Source of the DNA: Tubulanus polymorphus | Lineage: Eukaryota; Animalia; Nemertea | Length of the DNA stretch: 64,000 nucleotides | Assembly (NCBI RefSeq): GCF_964204645.1 | Contig: NC_134036.1 | Location: 2,790,001 to 2,854,000 of the forward strand | Reading direction: 5' to 3' | Shown: piece by piece, positions 6,771-37,684 of the stretch | Layout: each line of letters opens with the position of its first letter | How positions within the stretch are numbered: the stretch's first letter is position 1 | The notes under the pieces: generated by a model | Databases searched by the model: none | What the model was told of the DNA's origin: nothing | The model's input: the letters and a program-made list of their open reading frames with translations, nothing else | Program-made: the position numbers and the translations under genes

Positions 6771-6820
6771 AGTGAATGGAGGCTATTCTATCGAATGAAA
6801 AACTTATTAACATTCTTTAC

Positions 6821-9800
6821 CTTCTTAGGATCCGTTTCTTCGTAAAGTTTATCAGCCTTATCCAACAATCGGCGATCGACTGCGTAACCTTTGGCGACAC
6901 CGCTGCTTTCGTCCTCTTCGGGAATTCCCTCCGGGAATGTCGTCCTCGACGACGGGTCGACGTCTCCGTCGTCGAACGAGTCGACCTGGATACTGATCTG
7001 ACCGGCGGACGTGAAAAATATCTCGCGTTTACTTTTAACGTCGGTCGGCGCGTGTCGACTCATATCGCCCCCGGCGTCGAGCGTCGGTTTCGATTGTTGG
7101 ACGCGATCGCGTTTTTTCGTAAGACGATGAACAGTCCAGCCGTCGACATTCTCGACGACGATCTCACGTTTACGCGCGGCGGCCGCTCTCCGAGCCGAAC
7201 GCTCCGATTTACTCTCCGGTTTAAAACCGAACTTTCTCGTCGTCGTCGACGATTTCTCGATGCTGTGACGTTTACGATGCGGTTTCGGCGGCGTCGGATG
7301 AACCTCCTCCGCGCGACCTTGAGGATCGTCGGTCTGTTCGGATTCCTCGATTTGACGCAGACGACGTTCCCGTCTCGCCGCTTTACGTAGTTTACGCTCG
7401 TGTTTGTATAACTCACTCCGCGATATTTCACCCTCCGTCGATTTCCTGCGTTCTTCTTCCGATTCGTTTTTCGACTTTTGTTGTAAAATGTTGCGATCGA
7501 CGAGGGCTCCGCGGATACGACTAACGATCGACCAGTTGTTGCCCGTCGCTGACGAGTTTCTATCTTTATCGCTTGTATCTACGACGACAGCTGTTGTAGC
7601 CGTTGCTAGGAGATGATCGTCTTCTCGGGAACATCTGTCGCCATCGATTGCGTCAACAATGTTTCTGTTTATTTTATTATCGATCGTGAATCTATCGCCT
7701 CCTCGGTCAGTTGTCGGCGAGGAGGACGACATATTCCCGCAGCCGTTGTTACCAGGCGACAAATTCATCGCATGATTGTTGATCGCTCGTAACCGTAGCA
7801 ACTCGGCACTGCCGTTTTCCCCGTCATCGTAGACGGACTCGACGTCGGCGTCGTAGCTAAATCGAACGTTCAAATGTCGATCGGACGGAAATTCCAAGAT
7901 GTCCGAACATCGGGAGCTCGATCGACTGGTTTTCTGGTCGACAACGTAGAGACTGTCCTCGTCGATTCGCTGCGGCATGACGGGTAAACTCGGCGAGTCA
8001 AGGCTACTCGTACCGGTGCTGCCCCCGTGAGATGACAACGATCGTAATCGCGATAGAAACGATGCCTCGCGTAATTCGGGCTTCGAATCCGAACGTTTAT
8101 CGTAATCGGGACTTTTCACGCTCATTGCTGCCGTAGCCGTGGTAACGCCGCTGTGCTTACCGCCACTTTTCAATTTCGAAAAGAACGAAACTTCGCGATC
8201 GTTGTTCTCGGAATCGCCGATGTTATCGTCGTAGTGAAACACACTCGACGCCACCGAGTCCGTGCTGTCCATTTTTTTGATACTCGCGATTCGCGAAAAG
8301 AACCACGGACTGCGTTCATTGTTACCATTGTTGCTATTGACGATACGATCGGCCTTACAGTTCGCGTCGAGACTTTCTCCGATTTTTCCACCTTCGCACG
8401 ATTTAAAAACGGCCGTCGGTGAATTTACGATATCGTCGGCCGTCGATATTTTCTTTGCGTTGGCTCTCTCGTCGTCGGGGTCGACAGCCGACTTTTTACA
8501 CATAAACCGCGAAAATACGGACGACTTCCCTGTCTCTTCCGGTTCGTCATTCGCATTTGTCGTCGATAGCAACGATGAGTACTCTTGCGCCGCGTCCGAC
8601 TCGTTCGGAGTCATCGTCGTGGATGCGAGTTCTTGCGACGACGTGCCGTTGCGTTTCAAACCGAATCCGGTGATTCGCGAAAATAGCGACGGTTTCTCGG
8701 TGACGTATTCCTCCTCGCTGTCGAACGAATAATCGCTACGATCCTCGGTGCTGCGCCCTGTTATCAGCGAGAAGAACGACAGTTTACCATCGCTCGATTT
8801 CACCGGAGGTGAACGCGATTTCGGCGATTTAATGGGCGCCTCATTGTTGTCGGATGATTTATTCGCGAGGAATCGCGATAAGAACGACGACCCTTCCGGT
8901 TGCGATTTGGGCGATATTTTTTCTACGTTTGTCGTCTGCTCGAGACCGATCGACTCGGTGCAGTCCGCGGACGTCTTCTCCGTCAAACTCTTTCCGATTA
9001 TGCGACCGAAAAATGAAGAATCAGTTTTCGGGCTCGAGGAAGCATCTTCGTCATCTTCCGCTTCGGGACAATCAAGTTCGTTGGTTACCTTAACGACATC
9101 TTCATTAACGCGCTTCGTACTCTGCTCGCTAGATGGCACTTTTGCGTATTGATTCAACTTTTCCGCTTTTGCGCGTAGATTAAAGAAGAACAACGATTTT
9201 GATTTCGGAGAATCGTCTTCACCGACGGTGGCGCCATCTTCTTCCTCTTCGACTTCGTCCATTTCCGTCGATTCGTCGACTTCCCGCGCGGCGATCGAAT
9301 CGCGGAATCCGGTGAACATCGATTCGAATCCTTTAACGAATCGATTTCCGATGCTGACTCCGCTCGATTTAACGATCGGCGTCCCGGGAACGCGATACTG
9401 AGCCGGATCGAAGTCCGAATGAACGCGTCCGTGCGATACGACGTCCGAACTGGAGACGCCGATTTCCTCGGTCTCGTCTGCGAACGTCACCGATCCTCGT
9501 TTGCGTGTGTCATCGATGCTGATCCTCAACGCGCTTTTCGCGCACGTCTCCTTCCGCGACGGATCTGACGATTTACGACTCGCGCGATCGTCGAAACTCT
9601 TCCCGCTCATCTGACGTCGTTTATCGATCTCTTTTTTCAACTCGCTGCCGCCCTTACTCGACGAGCCGTCCGAATTCCTGCGTCCAACGACGTCATCAGG
9701 CTGCGAACCGCGACGCTTCCCGGGGATCAGAGCGCCATCTAGCAGCAACTCGTGTAATTCCGATTGACTTAGTCGACGTATACCGCCGCCGCCGTTGATG

Positions 9801-12800
9801 TCGCCGCCATCTTTGGAATTTCGTCTCGGTTCATCTTGCGAATCGTGTGACGCTCTCAGCTGCTCCTGTCGAATATCGATGCTGTCTTTACTCGATCGTC
9901 TTAATCGATCTTTGCGGGTTCTTTTCATCGGTTCTTTCTTCATCTCTGTCGCCCGTACGCTCTTCCGACCCGCGCCGCCCGTTTTTTCCGTTTCTCGACG
10001 TGTTTTCTCCGACTGAACGCGAACGAGCTTCCGTCCGATGTTCAGTTCATCGTCGTCGTCACCGCAACAATCATCCTCGATGATTCCCGATTCGCGTCGC
10101 ATCTGTTTAAAACTAGTGCTCTCGACGATCTCTAAACTGGCGCTGGTTGCAAACGACCGGTCCGGCGATGAAACAATGTCCATGTTACCGTGCAACGGGT
10201 CACACGACGATAGATAATCGGTTTCGAGTGTCGTCGATGGCAAATCTAAACTCAACGAACTGGCTCGACTAATCTCGATCAACGCGTTGCGCCAATTCTC
10301 GCCTTTCTCGGCCAATGATCCGATATCGTAACCCTGCGTCACTAAATTCGGTACGAAATCAACGAGACTTTGTTCGATGAATTCTCGCGCGTAAATCGCA
10401 GCCTGTTCGTCGCACGTCTCCTCGTATTCGTCGCGTGTTTCCACGATTATCGAATCGACGATATCATTGATAATCTCGATTTGATACGTTTGATGCGCCT
10501 GTTGGATGATCTCGTTGACGAAGTCGTACGCGCACGTCGTCAACAGGCGGTCGCTAACGACCACGGGCGATGAAGTCTCCATCTCGCCGCTCTGTGATCG
10601 AAGGCGTTGGAATTCGTCCAAACTCGATTCGACCGACGTTTGTTCCGTGCAATTTTGATTGAGAATGTTGACGCTTTCTTGCAAAACGTCGTCGACGAAC
10701 TGCATAGCAATCGCCTCCTCAGACGCGGCCGCCTGCCGATTGGTCGATTCGCAACAATCGTAAATATTCACCGATTGATCGCCGCGACGACGACAAACCT
10801 CCGCTATCACCGTCGTAGATGACAACGCGTCGTTAACGGTATTGTTGGCGATTTCGCTGGTTCGTTCTTTCAAAACGTCGACGGCGTCTTCGATGAGTTT
10901 ATTGACGAAAAACGCCGAGAAATTAAAAATCTGTTCGTCGTCCGTGAGACTGTCGTCAAAATAATACGTATCGTCAAAAACGTGGACCTCGCGAAGACGA
11001 CACGACGATAACGTCGCCCCTGACGACGATGATGCGTATTGTTGCTGTAAGTCGGCGAGATCGACGAGCGAACACGTGTTACTGCCGATCGACGACAGAT
11101 CCTCGTCGCTGATGTCGCAATCGGACGCCGTGACGACTGAAGCTTGTTGCTGATCGCGTATGAATCGTACCCGCGACGCTGGCAGCGCCGCCTGCTGGTT
11201 CGAATCATGAACTATATCTCTAGCGATATCATGCGCGACGTAATTCCCATCACCTAACATCATCAGTTTATACGTTGTTGTCGCCGCGGCGTCCATTGTT
11301 GGCGGTTTTACATAATACTTCTTACGGCAAATACTGACAGCTTGGTCGATGATGTCATCGATGTAACTTTGAACGGTTGTTAGGAATTCCGGATCTTCGT
11401 TGTCGGCGGCGATTTGAGAATAACGGTATACGCGTGGTCGATGGCGTTGCCTATTCGGTGGTGGTGGTGGCGCCGCTGTACATGTCGTCGCGTTCAGCTT
11501 CGAATGGCGTTTCAAACACGATGGACATTTCCGGCGTTGTCGACGTCGTTGTTGCTCGGTAACTGTCATCTCGGCGATGTTCGCTAGGTTACGTTTATCG
11601 GGAATTCTCTCATCTCTTCGAACGTCGTGCGTTAATTTCTCCCAATTTTCAGTCGTTCTATCGCTACGTCGACGCTCGTCTGCATTGCCATCGGTTACTC
11701 GCTCGACTACAGTTGCTATGGTTCTACCGACTAAATGAGCCCGGGATGATGCTGTCCCTCGTTGCTCTGTGTCGACGTGCTTTGCTAGAATGCACCACAA
11801 TCGAGTCATATCCTGTTTTCCGAACTCGGCCGTCTCCGGATCCACGTCCTTGAGATCATCCGTTCCTTCGTGAACGACTTCTTCGTTTACTTCTCGCGCC
11901 ACCTGGTGACCGATTACTTCACCAGTAGAGCATTCCTCGGCGAGGTGCTTCCCCAGTTTACCCCAGCGCGTTCCGATTTGCTCCGGTTGCGTTTCGGCTC
12001 GTTGTTTTCCCGTGAAACTCTCGACGATTTCTAAACTCGATTCACGACGAATTTTGTCGATGATTTTGTCAGTGTCGATCGGTCGATTCTTCTTGGTGTC
12101 GTCGGATAGATGTTCCCCGAGTGTTGCCCAGCGCGGAGTCGCGTATTTCGACGGGCCTTTTTCGAAACTTTGCCCGGCGAATTCTCGTATGATCTTTATT
12201 GTCGTCTTCGATTTAGTCTTCTGCGCCGGTTCATCATCTTCGACGGTGTTGGACTGCGAAACGCCCTTCGAAAGCCGATCCCAATCTTCGTCGTAATCTC
12301 GACCGCTGCACGACTTCAATTTCTGCTCGTCATCTGCAGCGAGGTCATTTCCAAAAATATCTGTAACCACAGCGAAATTTGGACACGACTCCGAGCGCTC
12401 TTTGACGTCGAGTTCCTCGTCGTAGCTGGCGCTTCGTTCGGGAACGAGGAGGCGTCCGAGGTGATCCCATCGGTCTCGCGTACGGATATTCGGAATTTCT
12501 AACGGATTCGCACGCGGACGCTCGCTCTGCGCGAATATCTGATCACCACCAGGTGGCGTTCCCATCACCCCGCAATTCGATAGATCGTTCCACGAACTTG
12601 CTAAACCCGTTGATGATATGTTGATATTCAACGAGTCCATCTTCGATACTTCTGGTTCTGGTTGCATCGCTTTCTTGATGCACAGTTGTAATTTCAAAGC
12701 ATCGGCATCGATGGCGCCATCTATTGAATCCTGGCGTAGTTTACGTATGACTTCTTCTGGGTCAAAGTTCGGCCCATCGCGTTCATTCGTCAGGTTATTC

Positions 12801-14359
12801 AAACTGTTCTGCGGAGTCATGGGTTCGCAGTCTGTGTCACACAGAATACCGAGGTGGAGTTTCTTCTGGCGCACCTCCTCAAGTAGATATGCATTTTTGA
12901 TGCACGGTAGCTCCCCCTGCGACGCGTGAAGTTGCGTCGGATCCGCAAAACTCGTCTGAGGCGTCAACGTACGGTGACATTCGTCTTTTTCATTGTCGTC
13001 CTGGACGACTTCGGCGCTTCGTCGCAGAGCTTTCGACAACGCGGAGGAGCGCTCTTTACGTCGCATATCGAACGTGTCTTTCAACGAGCGTTCCCACGAA
13101 TTTTTCAAAATTCCCATCGGTTTCCGGTCCGGCGCAACGGTGGCGCTAGTAGCATCGGCGGCTTTGTTGTCATCGTCGGTGTTGTCGATCGGAAACGCGG
13201 CGAATTTCGATTCGGATTTCAAACAATGCGGCGAGTTGCAATAATCGTCTTCTTCTTCGAGAACATCGCTGAGATATTTCTGCAGAATCTTTCGCTTCTG
13301 TTCGACGTTGATCAGTTGATCGATGTTCGTCAGTTCGGGCATGCCGTGTTGCTGCATGAAATACTCGAATTTCTTATCGACGAGACTCGCGCTTTCGACC
13401 ATCGTATTATCGAACGCCGCGAACAAATCGACGCCGTCCGGACCGGCGACCCATTCGCGCAACTCGCGTAATTCAGAGATTTTCTGATTCCGTTCTTTCG
13501 CTTGTTCTTTCATTTCGTGGTCGCTGAGCATGCTCCCAGTTCGGAGAAACTTTGCCGATTTCGCCGCGCGATCGTCGTCGGGGCCGACGCCCCCGAGACG
13601 CATTCCTCCCAATTCGTCGAAACCCGTCCAACTCTTCCGTCGATGATCGTTCACCTTCTCGTCTTCATCTTCGTCTTCCTCGGCGATGCTGCGATACGGC
13701 GGCGTGTATAAATTCCCCGAGCCGATACTCGACCAATCGTAATGCTCTTTCATCGCACGTCGCTTTGCGCGGATTTTCTCCATGATCTCTGCGTTCCAGA
13801 AACTCGGCAGGCTGTTCTCGCGCGCGTAACGATCGAAATCCGTCTCCGGCGGAATATGCGGCGCTCCGCTTAACGATGTATTGTTCTTGTTGAACTCGGG
13901 ACAAAGCGGCGCGTCCGGCGTCGAAGTCGACGTCTTCGACGAGTCGTCCGATTCGGATTTAACGTCCGCTTCGTTGGAGTCGCCGAAGTTACCGAAATCA
14001 CGATCGATACTAAACTGCGAGCGGATACCCCATTGTAACGGTTTCGCGGCCGCGGCGGCCATCGGTAAACTAAACGCGTTGTAATTATCGCTATCGTCCT
14101 CGGTGAGCGGATCCGGCGTTACCGGGTAACCGCGCTGTTCTAGATCGCTCAATTCCTGATCGTCGCTGTCCGACGAAAGCGATTTCGCCGGTAATCCCGC
14201 GTTCAACATCATGTTCAACGAACGTCGTAACGTTCTATAGAGTTTATGCGAAGTGATGTCCTCGTTGCCGAGAATGAAGGTCGATAGTTTCGAGCCGTAT
14301 TTATGAAGCGGGATCAAGTCTAAACTCGGCACGGTGAACGCTTGCAGAGCGATTGTTAT
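6821..14359 (-). CDS. PRUNE2: prune giant alternative exon 8B (PRUNE2-like): DHHA2 C-terminal segment plus ~2460 aa disordered scaffold; may instead read through to the stop at 6788
   Basis: 7.5 kb open frame with acceptor tatatttttag|ATA ACA ATC at 14359, phase 0. The first ~48 aa (ITIALQAFTVPSLDLIPLHKYGSKLSTFILGNEDITSHKLYRTLRRSL) align with the short prune last exon. Candidate donor AAG|gtaaag at 6821; in-frame TAG at 6788-6790. Confidence 0.8.
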
Positions 14360-19965: not shown

Positions 19966-20026
19966 GGAGAGCAGGTAAGTCAAGGCATCAATAGTCTGAT
20001 AGATCTATCTCTCATCCGAATCTTAC

Positions 20027-20310
20027 CCTTCCATTTCGCACTGTTCTTTCGGCCGATGATCGATGACCTCGACGACGCAATCGGCGAATTCTTCGTCCGT
20101 CGACGACAATACGTGATGGTCGACCAACGACAATCGTAACCGCGATGATGCGTATAATGCGGCGAGATCGATCTCATCGCGGAATGTTAGATTATCGGAG
20201 CCGACCAGTTTGAACTTGTTCAGTAAATAGACGATCTCCGTGCGCAGGTTGAAATCGGCTTTCGGTATTCCGAGCACCGGAACGATCAACGTGAATTCAT
20301 CGGATTTTAT
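20027..20310 (-). CDS. PRUNE1: prune coding exon 3 (DHH catalytic motif)
   Basis: aattttag|ATA ... GAA GG|gtaaga, 284 nt, phase 0-2. Encodes VPVLGIPKADFNLRTE...FRDEIDL...LSLVDHHVL...VVEVIDHRP. Confidence 0.93.
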
Positions 20311-22272: not shown

Positions 22273-24205
22273 AAAATGGAAAGTCAGTTGAAATTTTGGA
22301 ACAACGTTAAGAGTTGGATCATGCGCGACTAGAACCGTAAACGATTTAGATCTTCAAACGAACCGAGAGTAGATTTCACAATGTTTACTGATTAAAACAA
22401 AGTCGTTTAAAGCCGATACATCAAAATCTCCTTTGATGACAGACGTATCATGACAACATACGAATAGGATTAAGTTGTAGGCACAGATAAGACTTGTAGA
22501 CCGAGCATAGATGCTTGAAATTTGAGGAAATATATTTGAAGATATTTTCGAAACGGGCAAAATAAAGAAGATAAACATCATTGAAATAAAAGGAATCCTT
22601 GGCAGCCTTCCAAATCAAATACTTAGGTCGAGTGACGATGATTAAATTCGAAGTAATGGGTGTAAAATGAAACTGGTCTTATTTTATCGGTGTCATGATT
22701 TCGAGAAAGTCAAAAGTTCCGAGTTGGCCACGTTCTGAGTTTGTTAAGGTTTACTGTATTTATAAGGTTTACTGTATTACTAAATAAACCCAGTCTTTGA
22801 GATCATTTCTGATTTGCCCATTCTCAGGGGCGGATCCAAGGGGAAGGTGCAGGGGGTGTGCACTCCCTCAAAAAAGTGTCAAAGTGCCCGGGAAAATAAA
22901 AATATTAAACTGATTACCTAGAAAGTTTTAATTCATAAGTATGTCCTCTGTATTTCCAAAAGTGAGTTTAATGTTTTCTGATGAGTTTTCTTTCTTTCAG
23001 GATCCCCTTTCAATTATATGATATGCCCTATTTTGGGGCGTGTAGCCCTCCCTGAATCAGACCCTAGATCCGCACCCTGTATACTAGAAACGGACCCTGG
23101 ATTGCGTAATTAGCGAACACGAAAAATATCGAAATCGATACGAGATATGTGAGACTGATATAATATATCGCAGATGAGAATCGATATCAATTAACTGATT
23201 AATGACTGGAAAGAGAACCTGAGGTGTGAGTGATGAGAGATCGTGGTAATTACTATCGCACCCCAGCTCAGTTATCAAGTAGATATAGACAAATTGCCAG
23301 GTAATTAATGAAGCATGTTGTTCGACATGGTGCTGTCTGCCGAGCAGTTACCGACGACGACGACGACGGCGGTGAGCCGCGTATTCGAGTATTGTAGGTG
23401 AATATTTGGAGTATGAAAGTCTACTTGTTACAACCGAAACCTTTCATTTAAAAAGAACTTCCAGCGACCTGAAAATCTGATTGTTATAATCAGCAGGAAC
23501 ACCATTAAAAAGAACTTCAGGTCACCAGAGAATCTATTTGTTACAACTGAGACAGTGAAACCTTTTACATAACAAACCTCAGGAGGCCTGTAGGAACGCC
23601 ATAACTATGAACTTCTTCATCAGAAAATCTATTTTATAACAACTGATATAGACAGTTGAAACCACAGAGGACCTGTAGTTCTATTAAACGTGGATCCTTG
23701 TTACATCACAACAAACTTCAGCAGACCAGAAAATCAGTTTGTTCTAACTGACAGATAGTCTAAAAATATCCAGTTCAAAATAGCGGGGGAGCTCATTATA
23801 ATGTACTTCAGAGGACCAGAGAAATCTGTTTGTTATTAATGAGTTTGTTTAAAAATTATACCCAGGATGAAATAACGGGGGACCTCATTACAACAAAATT
23901 CAGAGGGCCGAGAAAAAACCGATTGTTATATCAATCAGTACAAAATTACAACGGAACCTCATTACTGAACTTCAAGGGACCATGAAATTTGTTTGTTAAC
24001 CTTTACAAAGAAAACTTGACCATTCAAATCAAACTTTCGCCAGTGTATGAGATGTTTTCACAAACTCCACATTAGATGGTCTAATCAAACCATTCCTTTT
24101 GTCCCGAACCACCCCAAAGGTAAGGACAGCCTTCTTGGCAAGATCTAATTGACCAATCACACGCAGCGGTCATGGCCGAATTAATTACGCGCATTATTTA
24201 CTTAC

Positions 24206-24313
24206 TTTGTCGAGAAAATACGCGTACGAAATGGCCGAAATCGCCGAGTCAAGGTCGCAAGCTTCGTTGCCGATGACGACGTGAATGCAGCTGTACGTGT
24301 CGGCAGATGAGAT
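24206..24313 (-). CDS. PRUNE1: prune coding exon 2 (DxD motif)
   Basis: Not in the ORF track. tttttcttcag|ATC ... AAA|gtaagt, 108 nt, phase 0-0. Encodes ISSADTYSCIHVVIGNEACDLDSAISAISYAYFLDK. Confidence 0.93.
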
Positions 24314-27660: not shown

Positions 27661-28050
27661 TTAAGCTCATGAACGTAAAACGCTCGAATTCAGAATCTCA
27701 CCCCGTGCTAGGTAAGGAGGGGTGAGTAATAGCTCAACAAATCGAGACGACAGTAGATTACATCGTCTGTTTCCCCGCTTACCCGTTCGTTCGTTATTCA
27801 ACCTTTTGTCACGGACGACGCTTTATTAAACATGAAACAAAAATAGATGCATTAAATGCGAAGGTATTTCAAAGGCGTTCCCATGGCAACAGAACTACTA
27901 CCGGAAAATTGCGATGCCCTCGGCAACCGTACTAATAAATATAGATATATGCATATGTATAGATATATATATGTGTATAAATATTTAAGTTGTAAAGCCT
28001 TTTTTAAATTGATTGTTCCATATTTTATGTTTTTGCGTTAACTGCATTTA

Positions 28051-28270
28051 GGCTAAAAAATGATACCTTATTTCTCATTTCTGCCGAGTTTAAAAGTTGA
28101 CGCGGCCGGCCGCCTATCTACATGTTACTTTTTTAAAGAAATAACAATCAAGCTAACAATAACAGACAACAGACCCGGTAGTTATAGAAATGAATTGATT
28201 ACAAATTTTATCGCAATTTACAAAAGTGACCTGGCCGATTAAGAGAAACAAGGTATCATTTCTATTAGCC
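28051..28270. mobile_element. MITE family A copy
   Basis: ggctaaaaaatgataccttatttctc ... gagaaacaaggtatcatttctattagcc inverted termini; internal identity to 2216-2526. Confidence 0.7.
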
Positions 28271-29331
28271 TTGTTGCAGTTTGGTAGAAAAAACTTTGCG
28301 TTATTGGTACATCGAATATTGGGCAGGATAATGTACGTCCACCAATAAAAATGCGCAACCAATAACGGAATGGTAAATGAGAATATTACTGTTATAGTTA
28401 AGTGTTTATTGAGTATGGGGACCATGTAAATACCGCAATGAATAACTAACAGGGCCGTTTACGATGGGAATTAAGAGCTGCGCAATACCAGGTCAAGTGA
28501 TAGATGACACCGCAACGCCATCTTGTGATCGCTTCTCTTCCCTCGAGACTTCAATTCAGGAATGATTTAAAAACGTATGTGAAGAATTAGAAAAAAAACG
28601 AACACTTGAAAATATCAGGAATGAAATATGGAAATATATTGTCTCAGAAAATATGTTGAATGAAATTATAACTTTGGTAACATTGAACTTTGCTCTCTTG
28701 GTCACAGTGCATAGTGAATATTTGGTGAAGCAGGAACTGCATGGAAACAAGCGTGAAATGATGTCAACCTACGTTAAGTGCTATCAGAAACAATTTGTAT
28801 TCAAGAACATATCAACATTGAAATATGAAAGTAAATTCCAAAATATTCCAAAGCTTACAACTCAAAACCTTTCAAGAACTCCCTAGTAATGTTAATGTTT
28901 GCAAATATCAGAAAGAAGCACAAACGCTATCGAATAAACATTTCAAAAAATGTTCAAAACGTTCTGTAACACCTTGAAACACAAGCCAGTAACCAGAATG
29001 TCAGTGCTTACAGGGCTTCAATGGGAACATTGAATATGGAAGAAAATGTCATGTAGGGCCTTGAGTAACACCTTTCCAACAGTTCATGCATGCGAGAATA
29101 GTTATCTCATTCATCAGATGGCTACGAATCAACACAAGAAGAAAATGCTCAAAACATTCAGCAATAGTTTAAAAGACAAGCCAGTAACAAGGATGTCAGC
29201 GCTTTCAGTGTTTTGAATTGGAACATTGAATATGGAAGAAATTGTCAATATGAAAAGTAAATGTGAGCCGCAAGCTTCAGTACGACTGTTCCAACAGTTA
29301 TCTATTTCATTAGCAACGCGCGATTGAAAAT

Positions 29332-29898
29332 CTAGTGGTCCGGGCGCGTCGGGGCGCCGGTCAAATTCTCGCGCAGTAAATGCATTTCGTTCAACGCTTG
29401 AGTCAAAAACGGTCGCACCGTGTTCAACTCCATCAACGTCAAAAAGTTCAACTTGGCGTTCGTCGAGTCGCTTTTCACGAATAAATCGACGCTACTGCGT
29501 AATTTCGACATTCGTAAATCCCAGATATCCTTAACGAGCGTACGCACGTCGTCCGCTCGCGGAATATCGTCGGCGGCAACGTTCAACAATAACTGCGACA
29601 CCTCGACGTAGAATTCGTCGGGCATTTCGGTGAAAAGTTCCGAATCGATCTCCGCCTGTTTCGTCGCTTCTAACGCTTCGACGTTCATCCACGCAGGTGG
29701 CGTTATCCGACATTTTTGGCGCCGTTTCAAATTGACGGCTAGCCACAATGGCACGTCGTCGACGGCGACAGCTGCCGAAAACGGACCGACGTCGCCGCCG
29801 ATCATGTAAAGTTTAGCGAGCGTAAAATTCGGCACGATCGTCACGGCGCGTTTCTCGGCGAAGAATTCGACGTCGGCCGGATCCATATAGTCGTACAT
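29332..29898 (-). CDS. GINS2: DNA replication complex GINS subunit PSF2, intronless CDS nested in prune intron (alternative ATG at 29886)
   Basis: MDPADVEFFAEKRAVTIVPNF...GPF...VPLWLAVNLKRRQKCRITPPAWM...IPRADDVRTLVKDIWDLRMSKLRSS...LTLMELNTVRPFLTQAL is full-length PSF2. Acceptor gtatcgttttag|GCG at 29940. Confidence 0.95.
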   Translation of the reverse strand: MYDYMDPADVEFFAEKRAVTIVPNFTLAKLYMIGGDVGPFSAAVAVDDVPLWLAVNLKRRQKCRITPPAWMNVEALEATKQAEIDSELFTEMPDEFYVEVSQLLLNVAADDIPRADDVRTLVKDIWDLRMSKLRSSVDLFVKSDSTNAKLNFLTLMELNTVRPFLTQALNEMHLLRENLTGAPTRPDH

Positions 29899-32800
29899 TG
29901 TTGTCGTCACCGTGGCCGCGGCGCCCGTCGATAGACCCGCCTAAAACGATACAAACAGAAAAACGACGGATGGTAGAGTGAATGAAACAAAAAAAATACA
30001 ATGTGGTGGAGGTGTGTGGTGCTAGTTGGGGATAGGGTAGGAATGGAGCTGAAGGTACGGCTGTGTTATACTAAAGTTGTGCGGTACGATCTCTAGAGCT
30101 CTGGAGTCGTTCAAGCTATTTAAGTTTACGCGATTTGGACTTCGGGAAGGGAACCTCAGTAGGGTGGCCACTTTCCGCCTGTTCGAATATCCTCCTGAGT
30201 GAATCAGAGAAATTCCTTGATCTTAAATGTTACAATTCATTCATTTCTTACTGAATTATGCACTAATAAAGAACTACATGGTCAATAACATCATTCAATT
30301 CCCCGAGTTTTCCAAGTTCTTGGTAAAATTTGTCAAATTCCCTGAGATTTCGCCCTGATTTTTGTCTAGATTTTTCTGATTCCCATAGTTAACCTGATTT
30401 CTAAGTTAAGTGGCTTTCCTACTAAGGCATTGATACAAGTTGAACGGTGAGGGCAATTACCAGAGCATGCTTGAAACATAAATGAAGTGTGAATGGGTTT
30501 AAGGTCGACGACCCTGAAGCAGTGGATTTTAGTTTGTACGTGGTAGTGATGTTTAAAAGAAGTCAGTAAGGGTTTGAGAAGGGCATGCATGCGAACAAAT
30601 ACTCCATGAAAACTAGCTGCCGAGTCTTTATCAATTTGTAATTTCATTCACGTTTCAGTTCTTGTTACCAATTCCGAAACTAAAACGTTTGTGAAGCACT
30701 TTACCAGATATTCCTATCTTTCGTTATTTTGGATTTTAAGAGTGTTCAGTGTATCATGCTCTCTACTTCTTAAAGTGCAAGGCAATTTCGCAACAACGGC
30801 AAGCACATTATCATGACATTCAATGCAGACATTAATCAAAAGGTCCGATTTAAGTGAAATATTGCCAATCTTAATCTAGCTATAAATAATTTTCCAATTC
30901 ACCAGTTCATCCCTGTCTTATTATTAAACTGTTTTCATCTGTTTTACCAATTACAAATTAAACACCTACTGCACGACTGGGGGTGTTTTTTTTACAAGTT
31001 TTACGAAACAACATCAAGATGAAATGAGATGATAGAAAGAAGACTAGTTCGACTAGTTCAATGGATGGGTTAAGAAGTTTTCGTCAACTTATCCAACAAG
31101 ATTCATGGGAGCCATTGCACAACAAACATTGAAAATTCAAAAAATTAAGTCTGGACAATAAAAATTCTCTCAAATTCCAATGTTTTATCTGGGTTTCTGC
31201 CATTCACAGTGACTGGATTTATACTTTCAAGTTCATAACATTTTCCAAGGCATGCTCTTTAACTATCATTAACGTTAGTTTATCAAGATTCGATGGATCT
31301 TCTTCATCTTTTCTATATCGAACATATCCCATCAATGTCAAATTTCTCTCTCCTATCGCTCAAGATGAAGATTCTATTTAAGTAAGTGATAAATTTTCCA
31401 CATGACGAGACGTTGAACGTTTAAATCGGTATCTGAAAAGTCGATCGTATGCTTTAGAGTATTTCTGTACATTACAGAGACATCAAACAAGATACTAAAA
31501 CTGCCTGAAGATACAGATTGAGGTGATACAGGTGGAACTTCTTCTTCACGAACTAAATAACAACAACAACGACGGAAAACACATGCAATGATGGAATACG
31601 CTCACAGCGAAGAGATTAAAGCTTTGAACTGTTGTTGGAACATCTTCTCTTTAAGCGGGAAGGATGGTTTACGATGTTACAGAAAGGAAATGATGGAGAC
31701 TGATAGCAGAGGGATGGGCAAACCTAGTTTCAGAAAGTAAAGGATGTGGAGACAGGAGAGTCGAGCAAAAATTCTTTACTGATGTTGTTGATGAGTGAAA
31801 CAAAAGGATGAACAATGATGAACTTCTTTGACGAACACAAAACCTGGGAATGGGCAAATAAACGTTCCCAATGTTGGCTAAAGCTATTTGAAGTGAAGTG
31901 GAGATGAGTAATGACAGAGAAGATGATGATGTAGACAAAAAGAACAGGGAAGGGATGGGAGGCAGGTTGTCTCCTCACATTAGGCAGAATGTTTGTAATA
32001 ACAGCCATACTGTACCCAGCAATGTCCGGTATTGCCGTCAACACTACGATTTAAGACACTATTTTAAACCGGTCATCGTTTTAGAGAATATTCTACTTAC
32101 AATCAGCCTTAAGATCATTAATGGACTTAATACACGACTAATTAACTGAGCCCTTGGAGTTTAAGTACATTGTTCCCTCAGATGCACGAATTCAAACTTG
32201 CCAAATCAAAAAGTACTGCAAGGGCGATTTTCAAATAGGGCCTTCGTAAAAGTGAGCACACCATCATGTCACATTTAGGTGGCACCTGGTTGATAACGGT
32301 GATCTTTCCATACATTTCTCGGATAAGCAAATTTCCAGATATATCATTTTCAAATTTCCTGATATCCCAGTACTATGAGAACCATGTTAGTTAGCGCACC
32401 AAGGGTTGAAGAAGGTATCAGTGCAGAGCCTAATGGTCGCTGGTTGGTGAAGATGATTTTCAAGAAAAACTACTGAAGAAAGTTGCCCTTGGGCAAGCAA
32501 TTGATGTATCAAAACTATGCTATGTGAAGTGTACAGTGAAATTCCCGTATATTTCTTGGATTAGAGGAAAATCTATAAAATTCCCAAATTTTTCCAAAAG
32601 GGAAAATGTTATTCCCAGGTTCTTCCAGATTTCCCAGTGCTGTAGAAACCACGCAAGTTGTCAACCAAGGGTTGAGGTAGGTATCAGTGCACAGTATGAA
32701 ACCACAGACACTGGAACAGGGTTTGTAACAGCACTGTGGGTTCGTAATGATTCAAATCTATCATTACCTGCTCGATGAGATATTTCAGTAACTCGAGTAA

Positions 32801-33035
32801 CGACGACGACAATGACTGACGATGTTGATAATAATGATGATGAATATAGATGACGAAGATGAAATTGATCTATCGAATTACCCGTACAGATTCATATTTA
32901 TTGATGCATAATACCTATATGTTACATCATAGTATGAAGTATACCATATACAACTACCCCTCACACATTCAACATTGAAGCGTTCAATGTTAACAAAAAC
33001 ATGATATAGGCCTAAAGTCTATAAAATGTTTATCT

Positions 33036-33540
33036 AACATTTCGACTATATCCTAATAGTCATCTATATCCTAATAGTCATCTATATCCTAATAGACATC
33101 CTCAGGAATACTGTATTCCTTGAGCTAGTGTAGTTTATTCACGACTTTATCCTAATAGTCATCTTCAGGAATACTGTATTCCTTGAGCTAGTGTAGTTTA
33201 TTCAACGTTTCGACTATATCCTAATAGTCATCTTCAGGAATACTGTATTCCTTGAGCTAGTGTAGTTTATTCAACGTTTCGACTATATCCTAATAGTCAT
33301 CTTCAGGAATACTGTATTCCTTGAGCTAGTGTAGTTTATTCAACATTTCGACTATATCCTAATAGTCATCTATACCCTAATAGACATCCTCGGGAATACT
33401 GTATTCCTTGAGCTAGCGTAGTTCATTCAACATTTCGACTATATTCGACTATATTCTAATAGTCGTCTTTAGGAACACTGAATACGATTAGAATACTGTC
33501 AAAATGTCAAATAAGTTTACTAGCTCAAGGAAGCACTCAG
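33036..33540 (-). ncRNA. tandem array of type I minimal hammerhead ribozymes (Penelope-like pseudo-LTR / retrozyme-type, 69-bp unit); intact copies at 33199-33242 and 33268-33311
   Basis: The minus strand reads UAUUC-CUGAAGA-U-GACUAU(UAGGAU)AUAGUC-GAAAC-GUU-GAAUA. This gives the CUGANGA/GAAA core, a 6-bp stem II, stem I UAUUC/GAAUA, palindromic ACGU stem III and a GUU cleavage triplet. Confidence 0.75.
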
Positions 33541-34445
33541 ACTTTATATTTTTTTTTCGTTATTATTATGGGATTTTATACATAGGGCCTATATCACAAC
33601 ACAGATAAAGTGTTTGATCAATGGTCATTGAGCTGATATAATATCAACCATCTTGACGTGAAGTCTGTGGATGATCAAAATTTTGAAAGAATGATGAAAA
33701 GAAAATGATATAAGCATCGATCAAATTTTTTGAAGCTAGAAACCAGCGGCGCAAAAACTTATCGCAAATTACAAACTCCATCCGAATTTCTCGTCTAACG
33801 CCGTGGCGAAGATGACAATGACAAACGATGAAATACGTTAATCGAATGAAACATTTTCTCCCGCCGTTGAATTTCAGTTTTTCGCTCGGTTTTTACTCCG
33901 TTAAATTTTCCCGTTACCGGCGACGATGTATACTGTCATCGCCATAGGCGCCGCGAGCGTTTTTGTGTTCGGAACGTTAATTAAACGTTTTCATCTCATC
34001 TCTACAGCGGCGGCGACGGTCTGTTACGCGTGGGAGAATGAGCAACACGCGCAAACGACGTCGTCGTCGTTCCTTAGTCACGTTTCGTTAATTTCGACAA
34101 TTCAGATTTTTTGTACCTTCGCCGAGAGAGAAAAAGTATAGAGAGAAAATGAACTTAATTCGAGCGTAATAGAAACCAATTCTCGTTTTCATGTCTGAGA
34201 GCAATGTGCGGGATTCTTCAGACATTTCGGCTGTTTCTATCGACATTAAATGTCTAATCAAACTATCAACTACTTGGGCGAAGATATTTTACAATCCGGG
34301 GGCTGGTTCCGTTATCCTCCCTAAGAAATAAGACCAGTCCAAGAACATTTCAGTTCAATAGCCAACGTAACAACTCAGGACTAGTCTTAAGATTTAAAAC
34401 CACTTTTGGACTTACCGGGGTATGTCTCCACTGTGGAGCCGGACC

Positions 34446-34602
34446 CTGGACCCAGTTAACAGTCATGACCTAAGTCCCAAAGTGGTCTTCAATCTTAAGT
34501 CTAGTCTTAAGTTGTTACATTGACTACAGAACTAAGATGGTCTCTAAGATGGTCTAAGACTGGTCTTAAGTTTAAGCCATGACATGCTGTGAATCTGGCT
34601 TC
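34446..34602. mobile_element. MITE family C (aaagtggtctt...cttaag...aactaag...ccatgact); related copies ~24750-24895, ~34300-34440 (inverted), ~54547-54668
   Basis: Shared internal sequence among the copies, with cccagtt...gaactg-type termini like family B. Confidence 0.55.
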
Positions 34603-35185
34603 ATAGACCAGATTTCAGCTTCCCAGTTGTGAGTCAGAGTTAAAATTGGTTCATTTTAAAACTATTTAACTCCGGACCGTCAACTAACAACTGAGATTTT
34701 GTATCAATGGGTCCACATCTAATTTCTTAGATGATTATTTTATAGCCACAATAGAAAACTACTAATTTGGTTCAGATCGCCGATAATATTTTGTTAACGA
34801 GACGAAAAACATGAATGCAGCTGCCCATGCACCAGCACGCAACAGCTTCGTGTATCGGCAAAGGCTAATGCATCACATATACAATTACAGAGATACGATT
34901 ACTTATAACGATATGATTATGTTACGAGTTGAGTTAAATATTTCCAGAGCGCACGACGCGAAGATAGACATATTTCCGTCAACTGCTGTCACTAATGGCG
35001 ATAAATCCTAACAGACTGTTCGCGTTCACATGGAGGATTCTGACGTCGTCGATCACGCGGCGGTAATTTCAGAAATTTTAAAACGTCGAGTATGTATTCA
35101 TTATTCATCGCGTCGATACCAGTGATAGCACACGTAATAAACACCTTCACAAATTCGATGCCAGAATTATCTTCTTTACCTCCAG

Positions 35186-35289
35186 GGTCCAGTTCCACAG
35201 TTCCGAGTTGAGATTTAACTCTGAGTGAACTCATTGAAAATGAACTTTAACTCAGAGTTAACTCTAACTCACAACTGTGGAACTGAGTC
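35186..35289. mobile_element. palindromic MITE family B (TIR ~GACCCAGTTCCACAG, CAG TSD; Harbinger-like)
   Basis: cag|ggtccagttccacagtt ... aactgtggaactgagtc|cag. A near-identical inverted copy lies at 52561-52668. Confidence 0.7.
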
Positions 35290-35536
35290 CAGTATTGGAT
35301 AACGTACAGACAGGCAATTCGAAGAAAGGATGTTCAACTTCATGATAAAGTTAGAGTGAAATATATTGGTTACTCTCATGTTTTTCTTAAAGCTAACTGC
35401 TAAGCATTTTTAACCTGATAACTTCTTGCGAATTTAAGCTAAGATGCAGTGACAAAACATGTTCATCACTTTAATGCGCGAAGATAAAACAAAAATCTTA
35501 GAGTTGTTTCTCTACGATGGGATAAACCTCACTTAC

Positions 35537-35572
35537 CAGAGCGGATTTTGCATTCTTCAGAAACGTTTCCAT
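35537..35572 (-). CDS. PRUNE1: prune first coding exon (METFLKNAKSAL); the exon itself starts at an acceptor at 35623
   Basis: AAAATGG Kozak context; CTG|gtaagt donor, phase 0. The peptide resembles vertebrate prune N-termini (ME-x-FL...K-S-x-L). Confidence 0.8.
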
Positions 35573-37684
35573 TTTTAGAGAATTTACTGCTGCTGCTGCT
35601 GCTGCTGCTCGGTCAACAATAACCTATAAAATAAATTGAAAATTGATAGAAAGGAAAAAATACATATTTGCTGTGTGGAGTGTGGAGTGAAGGGCGAAAA
35701 TACCATTCCATGAAATATAGGCCTCGATACTCTATTTAGCCTTGCATCATCTAAAGTTTCGATATAGATATATTGCAAGGTAACCCTCAAAACCACCGAG
35801 CGCCATCCAGGATGTTATTAGCAAGTTTGCGGTTTCTGTATTTAAATTACAACTAGAGGAGTCAGAAAAGAAGACTCTTGGGAGGTAGTGCCCATCCTCC
35901 CCAAGCCGGATCGATAAACTTCAGCACCCTATGCCGGATTTATTCCCCATTCCGAAGGTTTCCGGTTGATTACACACACACGCACACACAATCTCATACA
36001 CCTGTCACTCTACACGGATCATCCGTAATAGGGACGTGAGAGGAGACAGAATTCGCTACACATCATAAACGGAGGTGTTTTTGATGTAGGAAACGTACAT
36101 CACAACGACAATTCATTTGGGAATTTGGTTTTTATGTTTCCGATTCGCATGCAGCAATAACGCTGGAATAAGCTAATATTTTCCGTCACTCCCCCGGGAC
36201 GGAACGGTCGTCGATAACCAACGACGATGCCAACAATGAAAATAACCGTAACCCGAGAGGATTATCGCTAAGACACAGATAAAGAAATAGAATCTTTATG
36301 GATGAAAAAACAAAGTATTCAAAATATGAGCGTATCCTAATAGTTATTGTCATGGAGACAATTGAAATAATTATGCAAATTAATGCAACTCGATACGCTA
36401 TTTGTAAATTAAGACTTCTCGCGTTGCCGATGTTCAAGAGCTGTATGATCGAGTGTTAGGTAAAATCTTGTCAGTTTCCGATGTAGTCACCTAATACGAT
36501 AAAAGCGTCCAAACGAATTCTACCATGAAATCGGATGATTAACATTCAAAGATGATTTAACCCTTTCAGTGTGTCTATACCGCAGTGCGGTGTATAAGTC
36601 AGTGATGGACTTTGCTAGTACACTGCATCGTGGAGTATCAATGTAATTACTTTTTTCTCTAATGAATGAAGGCAGCACCTGTCAAACATAGTGGTATATT
36701 TGTGGAATATACACATTGGCGGTATGCCCATCATTCATTGCACAGGGGTTATTTCTAAAAATTTTCAAATCATTTCCAGCGCTTTCAAGAATTAATTAGT
36801 CAGCTCTGAAAGGGTTGATTTGCATGTGAAACTGACAAAGGGCTAATTTTAATGGGTGTGTTTAATTTAGATGCGTTCAAGACTATATGTATTTGGATTT
36901 TTAACATAACATTTGTCAAGAACCGCCTATGTCTAATGTTCAACTTCAAGTTCATTTCATAGAAAAAGCAAATTATATAGAAAGCGATAAAAACATCCAA
37001 TAAACTTTTCTTTCAACAACCCTTGTATGCCCTCCTACCCCGCCATCCTGTTCGGCCCTAATAACACAGGCCTCAAATGAGCAATTTGCACGGAATGTTA
37101 ATTGCTAAAATCACACCCCAAACCACTTAAGACTAGATCTAATATCTACTTTAACATCTTCCTCAAAACCATAAAACACGATTAACTGTGGCTCCCCCGA
37201 TGATCATGAAAACATAAAACGCAACATAACGGGTGGATTAACCGTCGTCGTCTCATCGGTGACCGCAACAATTGTCACCATGGATACCACGCGAGTCTCA
37301 GGTGTTCGCTAATTGTTTAATTGGCTGAAAGTGTCGCCAGTGACGGCAATGAAGATTCAGATGAATGATGCCATCGGCGGAGTTTCACGCACGAGGACGG
37401 TGGAAATTGTTTTTTTTTATGCAAGGAGGAGCGAGCGTTCGTTGATTCCCGGCACGCTGGTAGCCGTCGACGACAATGGTGTATCGTCGTGTTGATATAT
37501 CAAAGGAACGCGATATGATTAAAACGCAGCGGAATGCCAACTCGATATCGTTCGTTCATAGTATCGTACATTTTTAAGACTAAATTTAATTTCGTAAAAA
37601 ATAGAAGCGAAAGCAATCAATTTACAGAACGTGCGCCGCTCCTAACATTCGAAATAGTCATACCCAGAATGAGGTAGAAACCGT

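What the first reader, a model, noticed from the sequence alone, without database searches (positions are those of the whole stretch)
29332..35623. Essential replication gene PSF2/GINS2 sits as a same-strand, in-frame alternative exon inside prune intron 1
Seen: the PSF2 CDS is intronless, lies between prune coding exons 1 and 2 on the same strand, and begins behind an acceptor at 29940. The 42 nt to the first ATG are open and phase 0 (AGLSTGAAATVTTT-MYDYMDPADVEF). Prune exon 1 also ends in phase 0, so splicing 35537->29940 yields METFLKNAKSAL-AGLSTG...-PSF2 in frame. Inference: a retroposed or relocated GINS2 captured the host promoter and first exon. One transcription unit would then choose among three unrelated outputs (PSF2, short prune, giant prune) by alternative last exons. 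Alternatives are a separate upstream promoter or spliced-leader trans-splicing.
Basis: partly seen in the sequence, partly recalled or inferred. Interest (0 to 1): 0.8.

Follow-up and report, generated by a model that had tools for sequence, protein, structure and literature searches.

The report
PSF2 retrogene riding on prune's first exon
[quoted passage not shown] At least some of its mRNA is made by splicing prune's first coding exon onto it, an arrangement of a kind already known from other animals.

Summary
The prune ATG is at 35572 and its exon 1 ends in phase 0 at 35537, followed by GTAAGT. An acceptor sits at 29941-29942, then 42 open nucleotides, then a 188-aa PSF2 reading frame (29898-29332). 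This is the only GINS2 in the 268-Mb assembly.

The predicted splice is real. One RNA contig in run X2 joins 35537 to 29940 exactly, with GT..AG ends. A sister run, X3, holds a contig that runs unspliced 17 nt past the acceptor. Both forms therefore exist, and contigs cannot say which dominates.

Retroposition is well supported. In a gastropod, an annelid, the nemertean Lineus and amphioxus, PSF2 lies head-to-head with a DUF3754 gene. Four introns sit at the same positions in Lineus and amphioxus. Here all four are gone, and the DUF3754/DUF3736 neighbourhood on another contig holds no PSF2 remnant. That makes this an "orphan" retrogene.

Not shown: translation from prune's AUG, which would add a 26-aa leader, and the absence of a private promoter.

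Hitchhiking retrogenes (Taf9/Ak6), orphan retrogenes and the VAChT-in-ChAT locus are known, so this is a new member of a known kind. The scan noted the same pattern elsewhere in this genome (PTAR1 in MRPS18B).

The parts
35537..35572 (-). Coding part of prune exon 1 (ATG plus 11 codons, METFLKNAKSAL). It ends in phase 0 and is the shared 5' exon joined to PSF2 in RNA.
   Evidence: Sequence and translation. The X2 contig carries 35537-35567 joined to 29940. An X4 contig carries 35537-35578 joined to 294 nt lying outside the laid stretch. The stretch is single copy in the genome.
35573..35623 (-). 5'UTR part of exon 1, behind a possible acceptor (AG at 35625-35624). It contains a CAG repeat. The true 5' end and promoter were not determined.
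   Evidence: Sequence. Codon score is non-coding-like in all frames. Read laying skipped 35579-35650 as repeat.
29941..35536 (-). The 5596-nt intron removed in the chimeric PSF2 mRNA. It is the upstream part of prune intron 1 and holds highly transcribed repeats.
   Evidence: Joint 29939/29940 to 35536/35537, 'skips 5596', ends CT..AC on the + strand, which is GT..AG on the - strand. Run X2, contig depth 84, 31 letters on the short side.
29941..29995 (-). Pyrimidine-rich tract and acceptor (TTTTAG). Its TAG is also the in-frame stop that closes the frame for unspliced RNA.
   Evidence: Sequence. The X3 contig runs colinear with the genome to 29956.
29899..29940 (-). The 42-nt linker (AGLSTGAAATVTTT) between the acceptor and the first PSF2 ATG. 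It is GC-rich and coding-like in the fusion frame.
   Evidence: Translation. Codon log-likelihood is 16.1 bits in the fusion frame against -2.0 and 10.5 in the other two frames. No intron window reaches that value.
29332..29898 (-). PSF2/GINS2 coding sequence: 188 aa plus stop, no intron, only copy in the genome. The canonical start MDPADVEF is the second ATG, at 29886.
   Evidence: Pfam PSF2_N plus Sld5. Human GINS2 match at E about 5e-66. Single genomic match. Homologues start MDPxEVEF.
28623..29331 (-). Inferred PSF2 3'UTR of about 709 nt, with an AATATA hexamer at 28640-28635. Inferred only.
   Evidence: The X2 contig extends 1077 nt below 29700. If it is colinear with the genome it ends at about 28623, 17 nt after the start of AATATA.
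24205..24312 (-). Prune coding exon 2 (ISSADTYSCIHVVIGNEACDLDS...). Phase-0 acceptor; it is the competing downstream acceptor for exon 1.
   Evidence: Sequence. No PDB hit on its own at 36 aa.
20026..20310 (-). Open frame holding prune coding exon 3, with the DHH motif (LVDHH).
   Evidence: phmmer hit to yeast exopolyphosphatase PPX1 (2qb6), E 7.4e-6. Pfam alone did not score the single exon.

Best explanation
PSF2/GINS2 here is an 'orphan' retrogene. A reverse-transcribed, intron-free copy landed in sense orientation in intron 1 of the prune (DHH phosphoesterase) gene. The original intron-bearing gene, next to the DUF3754 gene, was then lost.

The retrocopy is expressed, at least in part, by hitchhiking. 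Transcription starts at the prune promoter. The donor after prune's first coding exon (35537) is spliced to a strong acceptor at 29940, and the transcript most likely ends at a poly(A) site inside the intron near 28620, as an alternative last exon. When that acceptor is skipped, exon 1 joins prune exon 2 at 24312 and prune is made.

Exon 1 ends in phase 0 and the 42-nt linker is open in the same phase. A ribosome starting at prune's AUG, which has a strong context (A at -3, G at +4), would therefore make PSF2 with a 26-residue leader: 12 residues shared with prune and 14 from the linker.

Shown: the gene's identity, its single-copy status, the loss of all four ancestral introns, the departure from conserved synteny, and the existence of the exon 1-PSF2 junction in RNA.

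Inferred: that this is the main mature mRNA, the poly(A) site, that prune's AUG is included and used, and that the leader is tolerated.
For: (1) Junction in RNA. The X2 contig (1348 nt, depth 84) joins 29940 to 35537 with GT..AG ends. It ends exactly 31 letters (I take the assembler's word length to be 31) into exon 1, as expected where an assembly graph branches at a shared exon. X2 has the least intronic background of the runs and no unspliced contig across the acceptor.

(2) Both sides of the junction are single copy, and there is no second PSF2 locus. A processed DNA copy therefore cannot explain the joint.

(3) An X4 contig (a different study, 2014) carries exon 1 joined to 294 nt that do not lie in 29700-35650. 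Exon 1 is thus also spliced elsewhere, presumably to prune exon 2.

(4) Ancestral state. PSF2 is head-to-head with DUF3754 in Gigantopelta, Lineus, Owenia and Branchiostoma. In Liolophura a 531-aa gene with no Pfam hit on record sits in the same position. DUF3736 is also nearby in Owenia and Branchiostoma. Four introns lie at identical positions in Lineus and amphioxus.

(5) In this genome DUF3754 (contig C3, 9.45-9.46 Mb) and DUF3736 (C3, 9.496 Mb) remain neighbours. An 80-kb search at E<=1 finds no PSF2 relic there.

(6) The linker scores as coding in the fusion frame: 16.1 bits, near the top of real PSF2 CDS windows and above every intron window.

(7) The mechanism has precedent in the literature: PMC4772013 and PMC5408686 (Taf9 using the first exons of Ak6).
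Against: - The junction rests on one contig in one run, with only 31 letters on the exon 1 side. It stops 3 nt short of the ATG.
- In run X3, from the same sample, the assembled PSF2 contig is colinear with the genome to 29956 and shows no junction. No X3 contig is laid on 29957-30097, which could mean transcripts start just upstream, from a private promoter.
- Run X5 has a contig at 29963-30236 at about half the PSF2 exon depth.
- No PSF2 homologue among 120 has a prune-like or long conserved N-terminal leader. Nearly all start at MDPxEVEF, so a 26-aa leader would be unusual.
- No poly(A) remnant or target-site duplication was seen at the copy's ends.
- Run kinds are not on record, and contig depth cannot rank isoforms.
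Confidence: 0.6

Rival explanations
1. An ordinary nested gene with its own promoter. Most PSF2 mRNA starts a few tens of bases upstream of 29940 and is single-exon, translated from ATG 29898 or 29886. The exon 1-PSF2 junction is then a minor by-product of prune pre-mRNA meeting a good acceptor. PSF2 would still be an orphan retrogene.
For: - The X3 contig is colinear across the acceptor to 29956, with nothing laid just upstream of that point.
- Run X5 covers 29963-30236.
- Unspliced RNA has no upstream ATG between about 29985 and 29899, and the in-frame TAG lies at the acceptor.
- Carelli et al. report that most expressed retrocopies evolve or recruit their own promoters (PMC4772013).
- VAChT has private promoters inside ChAT intron 1 as well as shared-exon transcripts (PMC3053374).
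Against: - In X2, the run with the least intron signal, the assembled form is the spliced one and no unspliced contig crosses 29940.
- X3 and X5 carry intron coverage across the whole 5.6 kb, so pre-mRNA or DNA background can explain their unspliced pieces.
- The X3 contig ends exactly 31 letters after a variant at 29926. That is an assembly-graph signature, not a mapped transcript start.
- No promoter evidence was found: Inr-like hexamers occur near chance level and there is no E2F motif upstream.
- The linker looks coding in the fusion frame.
Confidence: 0.27
2. The chimeric mRNA is the main one but the protein is not a fusion. Either transcription for this isoform starts inside exon 1 downstream of prune's ATG, or ribosomes skip that AUG, so that normal PSF2 (MYDY... 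or MDPADVEF...) is made. Being in frame would then be coincidence. This is a sub-case of the best explanation at the RNA level.
For: - The contig does not reach the ATG.
- The canonical N-terminus MDPxEVEF is nearly invariant across animals.
- Being in frame and open has about a 1 in 4-5 chance expectation (my estimate).
Against: - Prune's AUG has a strong context (AAAAATGG) and would be the first AUG.
- The linker is coding-like in exactly this frame.
- An out-of-frame or leaky arrangement would cut the output of an essential single-copy gene.
- Crystallised human GINS2 chains with a few extra N-terminal residues exist (2q9q_A aligns from its residue 6).
Confidence: 0.2
3. Not a retrogene. 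PSF2 moved by a DNA-level rearrangement and lost its four introns one by one, or by gene conversion with cDNA, at the new site.
For: No poly(A) tail remnant or target-site duplications are visible. The DUF3754/DUF3736 neighbourhood has been locally rearranged relative to Owenia and amphioxus.
Against: All four deeply conserved introns are lost while the copy moves to another contig, sits in sense inside an intron and gains a new 5' intron. That is the classic signature of retroposition (PMC4772013). The hallmarks at the copy's ends are expected to erode in an old copy.
Confidence: 0.08
4. The junction is an assembly artefact, or the acceptor is served by spliced-leader trans-splicing.
For: Only one contig shows the junction, with 31 letters on one side.
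Against: - The joint falls exactly on a GT donor that ends a phase-0 coding exon and on an AG acceptor behind a pyrimidine tract.
- Both sides are unique in the genome, so no shared word could cause a chimera.
- The partner is a cis exon 5.6 kb upstream, not a leader sequence.
Confidence: 0.03

Closest known systems
Taf9 retrogene in the Ak6 host gene (mammals); the 'hitchhiking' class of nested retrogenes (Carelli et al. 2016, PMC4772013; review PMC5408686)
   Same: An intronless copy of a core housekeeping gene sits in sense inside a host gene. It is expressed as chimeric transcripts that carry the host's first exon(s), driven by the host promoter. The two products are unrelated.
   Different: In this genome the host exon contributes the start codon in frame, so the predicted product is an N-terminal fusion. 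TAF9 and AK6 are reported to be translated from different reading frames (PMC7749173). Evidence here is one RNA contig rather than CAGE plus transcript models.
Orphan retrogenes, i.e. a retrocopy that replaced its lost parent (Ciomborowska et al. 2013, PMC3548309; Carelli et al. 2016)
   Same: The only copy in the genome is intronless. The parental locus, recognisable by conserved neighbours, is empty. The coding sequence is intact and conserved (60-70% identical to other phyla).
   Different: Nine of the ten mammalian orphan retrogene families of Carelli et al. owe their broad expression to CpG-island promoters that they evolved or recruited (PMC4772013). This one is seen using a host exon. 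The lineage is a nemertean-like invertebrate, and the gene is a subunit of the CMG replicative helicase.
Cholinergic gene locus: VAChT inside the first intron of ChAT (PMC3053374)
   Same: A single-exon ORF lies in the host's first intron on the same strand. Output is chosen by alternative splicing and promoters within one locus, and private promoters and shared-exon transcripts can coexist.
   Different: VAChT and ChAT are functionally coupled and the arrangement is conserved from nematodes to mammals. PSF2 and prune have no known functional link and the nesting is lineage-specific, since Lineus keeps the ancestral locus. From my own knowledge, the shared cholinergic exon is non-coding.
Chimeric fusion retrogenes: jingwei (Drosophila), TRIM5-CypA (owl monkey) (reviewed in PMC5408686)
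   Same: A retrocopy recruits upstream coding exon(s) of the host gene in frame.
   Different: Those create new functions while the parent gene remains. Here the predicted fusion adds only 12 host residues to the sole copy of an old essential gene, so it looks like a change in regulation, not a new protein function.

Membership tests
GINS subunit PSF2 (GINS2) | N-terminal PSF2 beta domain followed by the Sld5-type helical domain | tested here: met
   Pfam PF25005 at E 3.5e-24 (residues 10-69) and PF05916 at E 6.7e-16, both over their cut-offs.
GINS subunit PSF2 (GINS2) | Full-length colinear similarity to experimentally solved PSF2 | tested here: met
   Aligns to human GINS2 residues 1-175 (2e9x_B, 6xtx_B and others) at E about 5e-66. 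It is 60-70% identical to mollusc, annelid and nemertean PSF2.
Retrogene (processed gene copy) | Lacks all introns of the parental gene within the copied region | tested here: met
   Introns lie after residues 31/69/102/~146 in Lineus and 30/68/101/~145 in amphioxus. None is present in 29898-29332.
Retrogene (processed gene copy) | Lies away from the ancestral (syntenic) position | tested here: met
   The PSF2-DUF3754 head-to-head pair is seen in 4-5 species of 4 phyla. Here DUF3754 is on contig C3 and PSF2 on C12, inside prune.
Retrogene (processed gene copy) | Poly(A) remnant and target-site duplications at the ends of the copy | tested here: not met
   None is visible by eye in 28400-30400. 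This is expected to be erased in an old copy, so it lowers certainty about the mechanism only slightly.
Orphan retrogene | No parental or other copy left in the genome | tested here: met
   One match genome-wide at E<=0.001. No relic at E<=1 in 80 kb around DUF3754/DUF3736. Caveat: this covers the assembly only, and very short exons could escape.
Hitchhiking or chimeric retrogene (Taf9/Ak6 type) | Nested in a host intron in sense orientation | tested here: met
   It lies between prune coding exon 1 (35572-35537) and exon 2 (24312-24205), all on the minus strand.
Hitchhiking or chimeric retrogene (Taf9/Ak6 type) | RNA junction from a host exon to the retrocopy | tested here: met
   The X2 contig joins 35537 to 29940 with GT..AG ends. 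This is one contig in one run.
Hitchhiking or chimeric retrogene (Taf9/Ak6 type) | Transcription depends on the host promoter, with no private promoter | tested here: inconclusive
   The unspliced X3 contig reaches 29956 and X5 covers 29963-30236. Contigs cannot show transcript starts. Motif scans were uninformative.
In-frame fusion protein (jingwei/TRIM5-CypA type) | The host start codon is on the chimeric mRNA and is translated through into the retrocopy | not testable with these tools
   The frame is open and the linker is coding-like. The contig stops 3 nt short of the ATG, and there are no proteomic or ribosome-profiling data.
Spliced-leader trans-spliced gene | The acceptor is joined to a short leader that is not encoded upstream in cis | tested here: not met
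   The sequence joined to 29940 is the unique cis exon at 35537-35567.

The most novel reading that the evidence does not exclude
The sole GINS2 of this animal would be made mainly or only as a fusion that begins with prune's own start codon and first 12 residues. One promoter and one AUG would then feed both a replication-helicase subunit and a phosphoesterase, including its PRUNE2-like giant form, with the ratio set by a splice/poly(A) choice in intron 1. It would also be one instance of a genome-wide habit in this lineage, alongside PTAR1 in MRPS18B, of replacing old intron-bearing housekeeping genes with retrocopies that ride on host first exons.
Probability: 0.3. Interest if true: 0.6.

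Novelty: new member of a known kind. Interest (0 to 1): 0.45.

Why it matters
GINS2 is an indispensable, normally proliferation-regulated subunit of the CMG helicase (established knowledge). If its only copy depends on another gene's promoter, first exon and perhaps start codon, two things follow. An essential gene can be re-housed by retroposition without losing function. And PSF2 and prune outputs become mechanically coupled, competing for one pre-mRNA.

The case is unusually easy to date, because Lineus keeps the ancestral intron-bearing locus. Together with a second reported case in the same genome, it suggests this lineage could be a good system for studying how orphan retrogenes acquire expression.

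It also matters for annotation. The gene callers gave a 188-aa product and would miss the shared exon.

Tried and rejected
- **Own-genome look-up.** The look-up of encoding contigs on the window's own PSF2 protein was withheld, so no annotation of the locus could be read.
- **Pfam on single prune exons.** Nothing was found at E<=0.1. Exon 2 alone also found nothing in the PDB. Only exon 3 gave a hit, to PPX1.
- **E2F motif (TTTSSCGC).** The window has 4 sites against 5.9 expected. None lies upstream of PSF2 or at the prune 5' end, and the one at 29715 is inside the PSF2 CDS. Uninformative.
- **Initiator-like TCAKTY.** There are 18 sites in 3.5 kb against 12.7 expected. The TCATTC at 29985-29980 is therefore no evidence for a start site.
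- **Rfam at gathering threshold on 28000-36500.** No family matched.
- **N-termini of 120 PSF2 homologues.** None is prune-like, so the fusion, if real, is lineage-specific.
- **Contig depth.** I did not use it to rank spliced against unspliced forms. The tool warns against this, and the three runs of one sample disagree.
- **Joined exon 1 + PSF2 protein.** Exons were handled by reference, one by one.
- **Costly searches and folding.** The large representative-protein search, structure prediction and complex prediction were not used, because family scans left nothing open.

Full report
**1. The observation**

All genes concerned lie on the minus strand.
- Prune's first coding exon starts with ATG at 35572 and encodes METFLKNAKSAL. 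It ends in phase 0 at 35537 and is followed by GTAAGT.
- About 5.6 kb downstream, a pyrimidine-rich tract ends in TTTTAG and an exon starts at 29940.
- From 29940 the frame is open for 14 codons (AGLSTGAAATVTTT). It then runs into ATG 29898 and a 188-codon ORF that ends at 29332.
- The in-frame stop just upstream is the TAG that contains the acceptor AG itself.
- The ORF is PSF2/GINS2. It carries Pfam PSF2_N (E 3.5e-24) and the Sld5 helical domain (E 6.7e-16), and it aligns to human GINS2 residues 1-175 at E about 5e-66.
- Prune coding exon 2 is 24312-24205, with a phase-0 acceptor and the motif VVIGNEACDLDS.
- The next exon, about 20310-20026, carries the DHH motif and matches yeast exopolyphosphatase PPX1 (E 7e-6).

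The in-frame, open arrangement would arise by chance about once in four or five tries (my estimate), so on its own it proves little.

**2. Only copy in the genome**

A six-frame search of the window's own assembly (268 Mb, 77 contigs) finds one PSF2 match, and it is this one. The exon 1 stretch and the acceptor stretch are each single copy.

**3. RNA evidence**

All four are Logan contigs and their library kind is not on record.

*Run X2.*
- A 1348-nt contig (depth 84) lies on 29700-29939/40 and then jumps to 35536/37. It skips 5596 nt whose ends are CT..AC on the + strand, which is GT..AG on the gene's strand.
- This is exactly the predicted 35537->29940 splice.
- The contig ends 31 letters into exon 1. 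That is what an assembly with 31-letter words (my assumption about Logan) does where a shared exon makes the graph branch. It also means the contig stops 3 nt short of the ATG.
- X2 has the least intron signal of the three sister runs, and no contig crosses the acceptor unspliced.

*Run X4 (another study, 2014).* One 429-nt contig carries 35537-35578 next to 294 letters that lie nowhere in the laid stretch. A small PSF2 contig shows low expression.

*Contrary evidence from the sister runs.*
- In X3, from the same sample as X2, the PSF2 contig is colinear with the genome to 29956, 17 nt past the acceptor, and no junction is listed.
- That contig ends exactly 31 letters after a variant at 29926. 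The variant is C>A on the + strand and is synonymous in the fusion frame. The end is therefore a graph effect and not a mapped RNA end.
- Nothing from X3 is laid on 29957-30097.
- X5 has a contig on 29963-30236 at about half its PSF2 depth.
- X3 and X5 carry patchy coverage over the whole intron, so pre-mRNA or DNA background can explain these pieces. A private start site just upstream of the acceptor cannot be excluded.

Conclusion: the chimeric splice exists, an unspliced form exists too, and their ratio is unknown.

**4. Origin**
- PSF2 lies head-to-head with a DUF3754 gene in the gastropod Gigantopelta, the nemertean Lineus, the annelid Owenia and amphioxus. In the chiton Liolophura a 531-aa neighbour occupies the same position but has no Pfam hit on record. 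Owenia and amphioxus also have a DUF3736 gene on the other side.
- In Lineus and amphioxus the coding sequence is split by four introns at the same residues, 30/31, 68/69, 101/102 and about 145/146. This is therefore an old bilaterian gene structure and neighbourhood.
- In the window's genome, DUF3754 (contig C3, 9.452-9.463 Mb) and DUF3736 (C3, 9.496 Mb) are still neighbours. tblastn with five PSF2 proteins finds nothing at E<=1 in the 80 kb around them.
- A gene that has lost all four ancient introns, left a deeply conserved neighbourhood, sits inside another gene's intron and has gained a new 5' intron is a retrogene. With the parent gone, it is an orphan retrogene.
- No poly(A) remnant or target-site duplication is visible, as expected for an old insertion.
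- Other agents of this scan call the genome a ribbon worm. Lineus, also a ribbon worm, keeps the ancestral locus, so the move would then have happened within Nemertea. I did not verify the taxon myself.

**5. How it most likely works**
- Transcription starts from the prune promoter.
- The exon 1 donor is joined either to the proximal acceptor at 29940 or to the acceptor of prune exon 2 at 24312.
- The first choice gives PSF2 mRNA. That mRNA probably ends near 28620, where the inferred end of the X2 contig lies 17 nt after an AATATA hexamer. This is inference only.
- The second choice gives prune.
- With prune's AUG in a strong context (AAAAATGG) as the first AUG, the predicted product is PSF2 with a 26-residue leader.

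Two points speak for translation of the linker:
- Its codon usage scores 16.1 bits in the fusion frame, against -2.0 and 10.5 in the other frames. That is near the top of real PSF2 coding windows (mean 7.7) and above every intron window tested.
- Six of its eight CpGs sit at codon positions 2-3.

Two points speak against:
- Nearly all of 120 homologues begin directly at MDPxEVEF, and none has a prune-like leader.
- The mRNA contig does not reach the ATG.

**6. Comparison with what is known**
- Retrocopies that integrate into a host gene and are expressed as chimeric transcripts with the host's upstream exons are a described class. The textbook example is mouse Taf9 using the first exons of Ak6 (PMC4772013, PMC5408686).
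- Orphan retrogenes that replace a lost parent are described too (PMC3548309, PMC4772013).
- In architecture the locus resembles VAChT in the first intron of ChAT, where private promoters and alternative splicing coexist (PMC3053374).
- In-frame recruitment of host coding exons is known from jingwei and TRIM5-CypA (PMC5408686).
- What is particular here is the combination: the sole copy of a CMG helicase subunit, the use of the host's coding first exon in frame, and a datable event in a little-studied phylum.
- The scan has already reported the same pattern elsewhere in this genome, an intronless PTAR1 in MRPS18B intron 1 (s1-511874). In that case the host-exon junction was not shown; here it is.

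**7. Verdict**
- Dominance of the chimeric form, inclusion and use of prune's AUG, and the terminal-exon status all remain to be shown.
- This is a new member of a known kind, of moderate interest.

Noticed in passing
window 33046-33444 (also 34277-34475 and 35073-35470): A 69-nt tandem repeat (4.3 copies, 95% matches) and two other intron segments reach contig depths of thousands to tens of thousands in the RNA-like runs, with many joints and loose ends. They are abundantly transcribed repeat families inside the intron that the PSF2 splice removes. Another note (s1-487746) reads 33036-33540 as tandem minimal hammerheads. Rfam at gathering threshold finds nothing there.
   Followed up: partly
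G000:C3:9452000-9497000 (loci L005-L008, L012-L016): The ancient DUF3754-PSF2-DUF3736 neighbourhood, seen in annelid and amphioxus, survives here without PSF2 and with a changed order and orientation. DUF3754 is on the + strand and DUF3736 on the - strand, about 33 kb downstream of it.
   Followed up: partly
window 28960-29250, minus strand: The presumed PSF2 3'UTR holds two or three diverged copies of a segment of about 80 nt (starting ...TTCTTCCATATTCAATGTTCC...) spaced about 190 nt apart. TRF did not report it at score 50.
   Followed up: no
window 29332-29940 and 6788-14332: Coding exons have a very high CpG observed/expected ratio (about 2.0) against 0.6-0.8 in introns and UTRs, and CpGs are concentrated at codon positions 2-3 and 3-1. 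This makes a simple and strong coding-frame signal in this genome.
   Followed up: partly
window 29926: A variant, C>A on the + strand, separates the X3 contig (A, unspliced) from the X2 contig (C, spliced), although both runs are listed under one sample. It may be allele-specific splicing or just a pooled sample and assembler choice.
   Followed up: no
window 35573-35623: The frame stays open upstream of prune's ATG back to a possible acceptor at 35624/35625 and runs through a CAG repeat (polyalanine in this frame). Its codon score is non-coding-like. An upstream non-coding exon of prune may exist.
   Followed up: no
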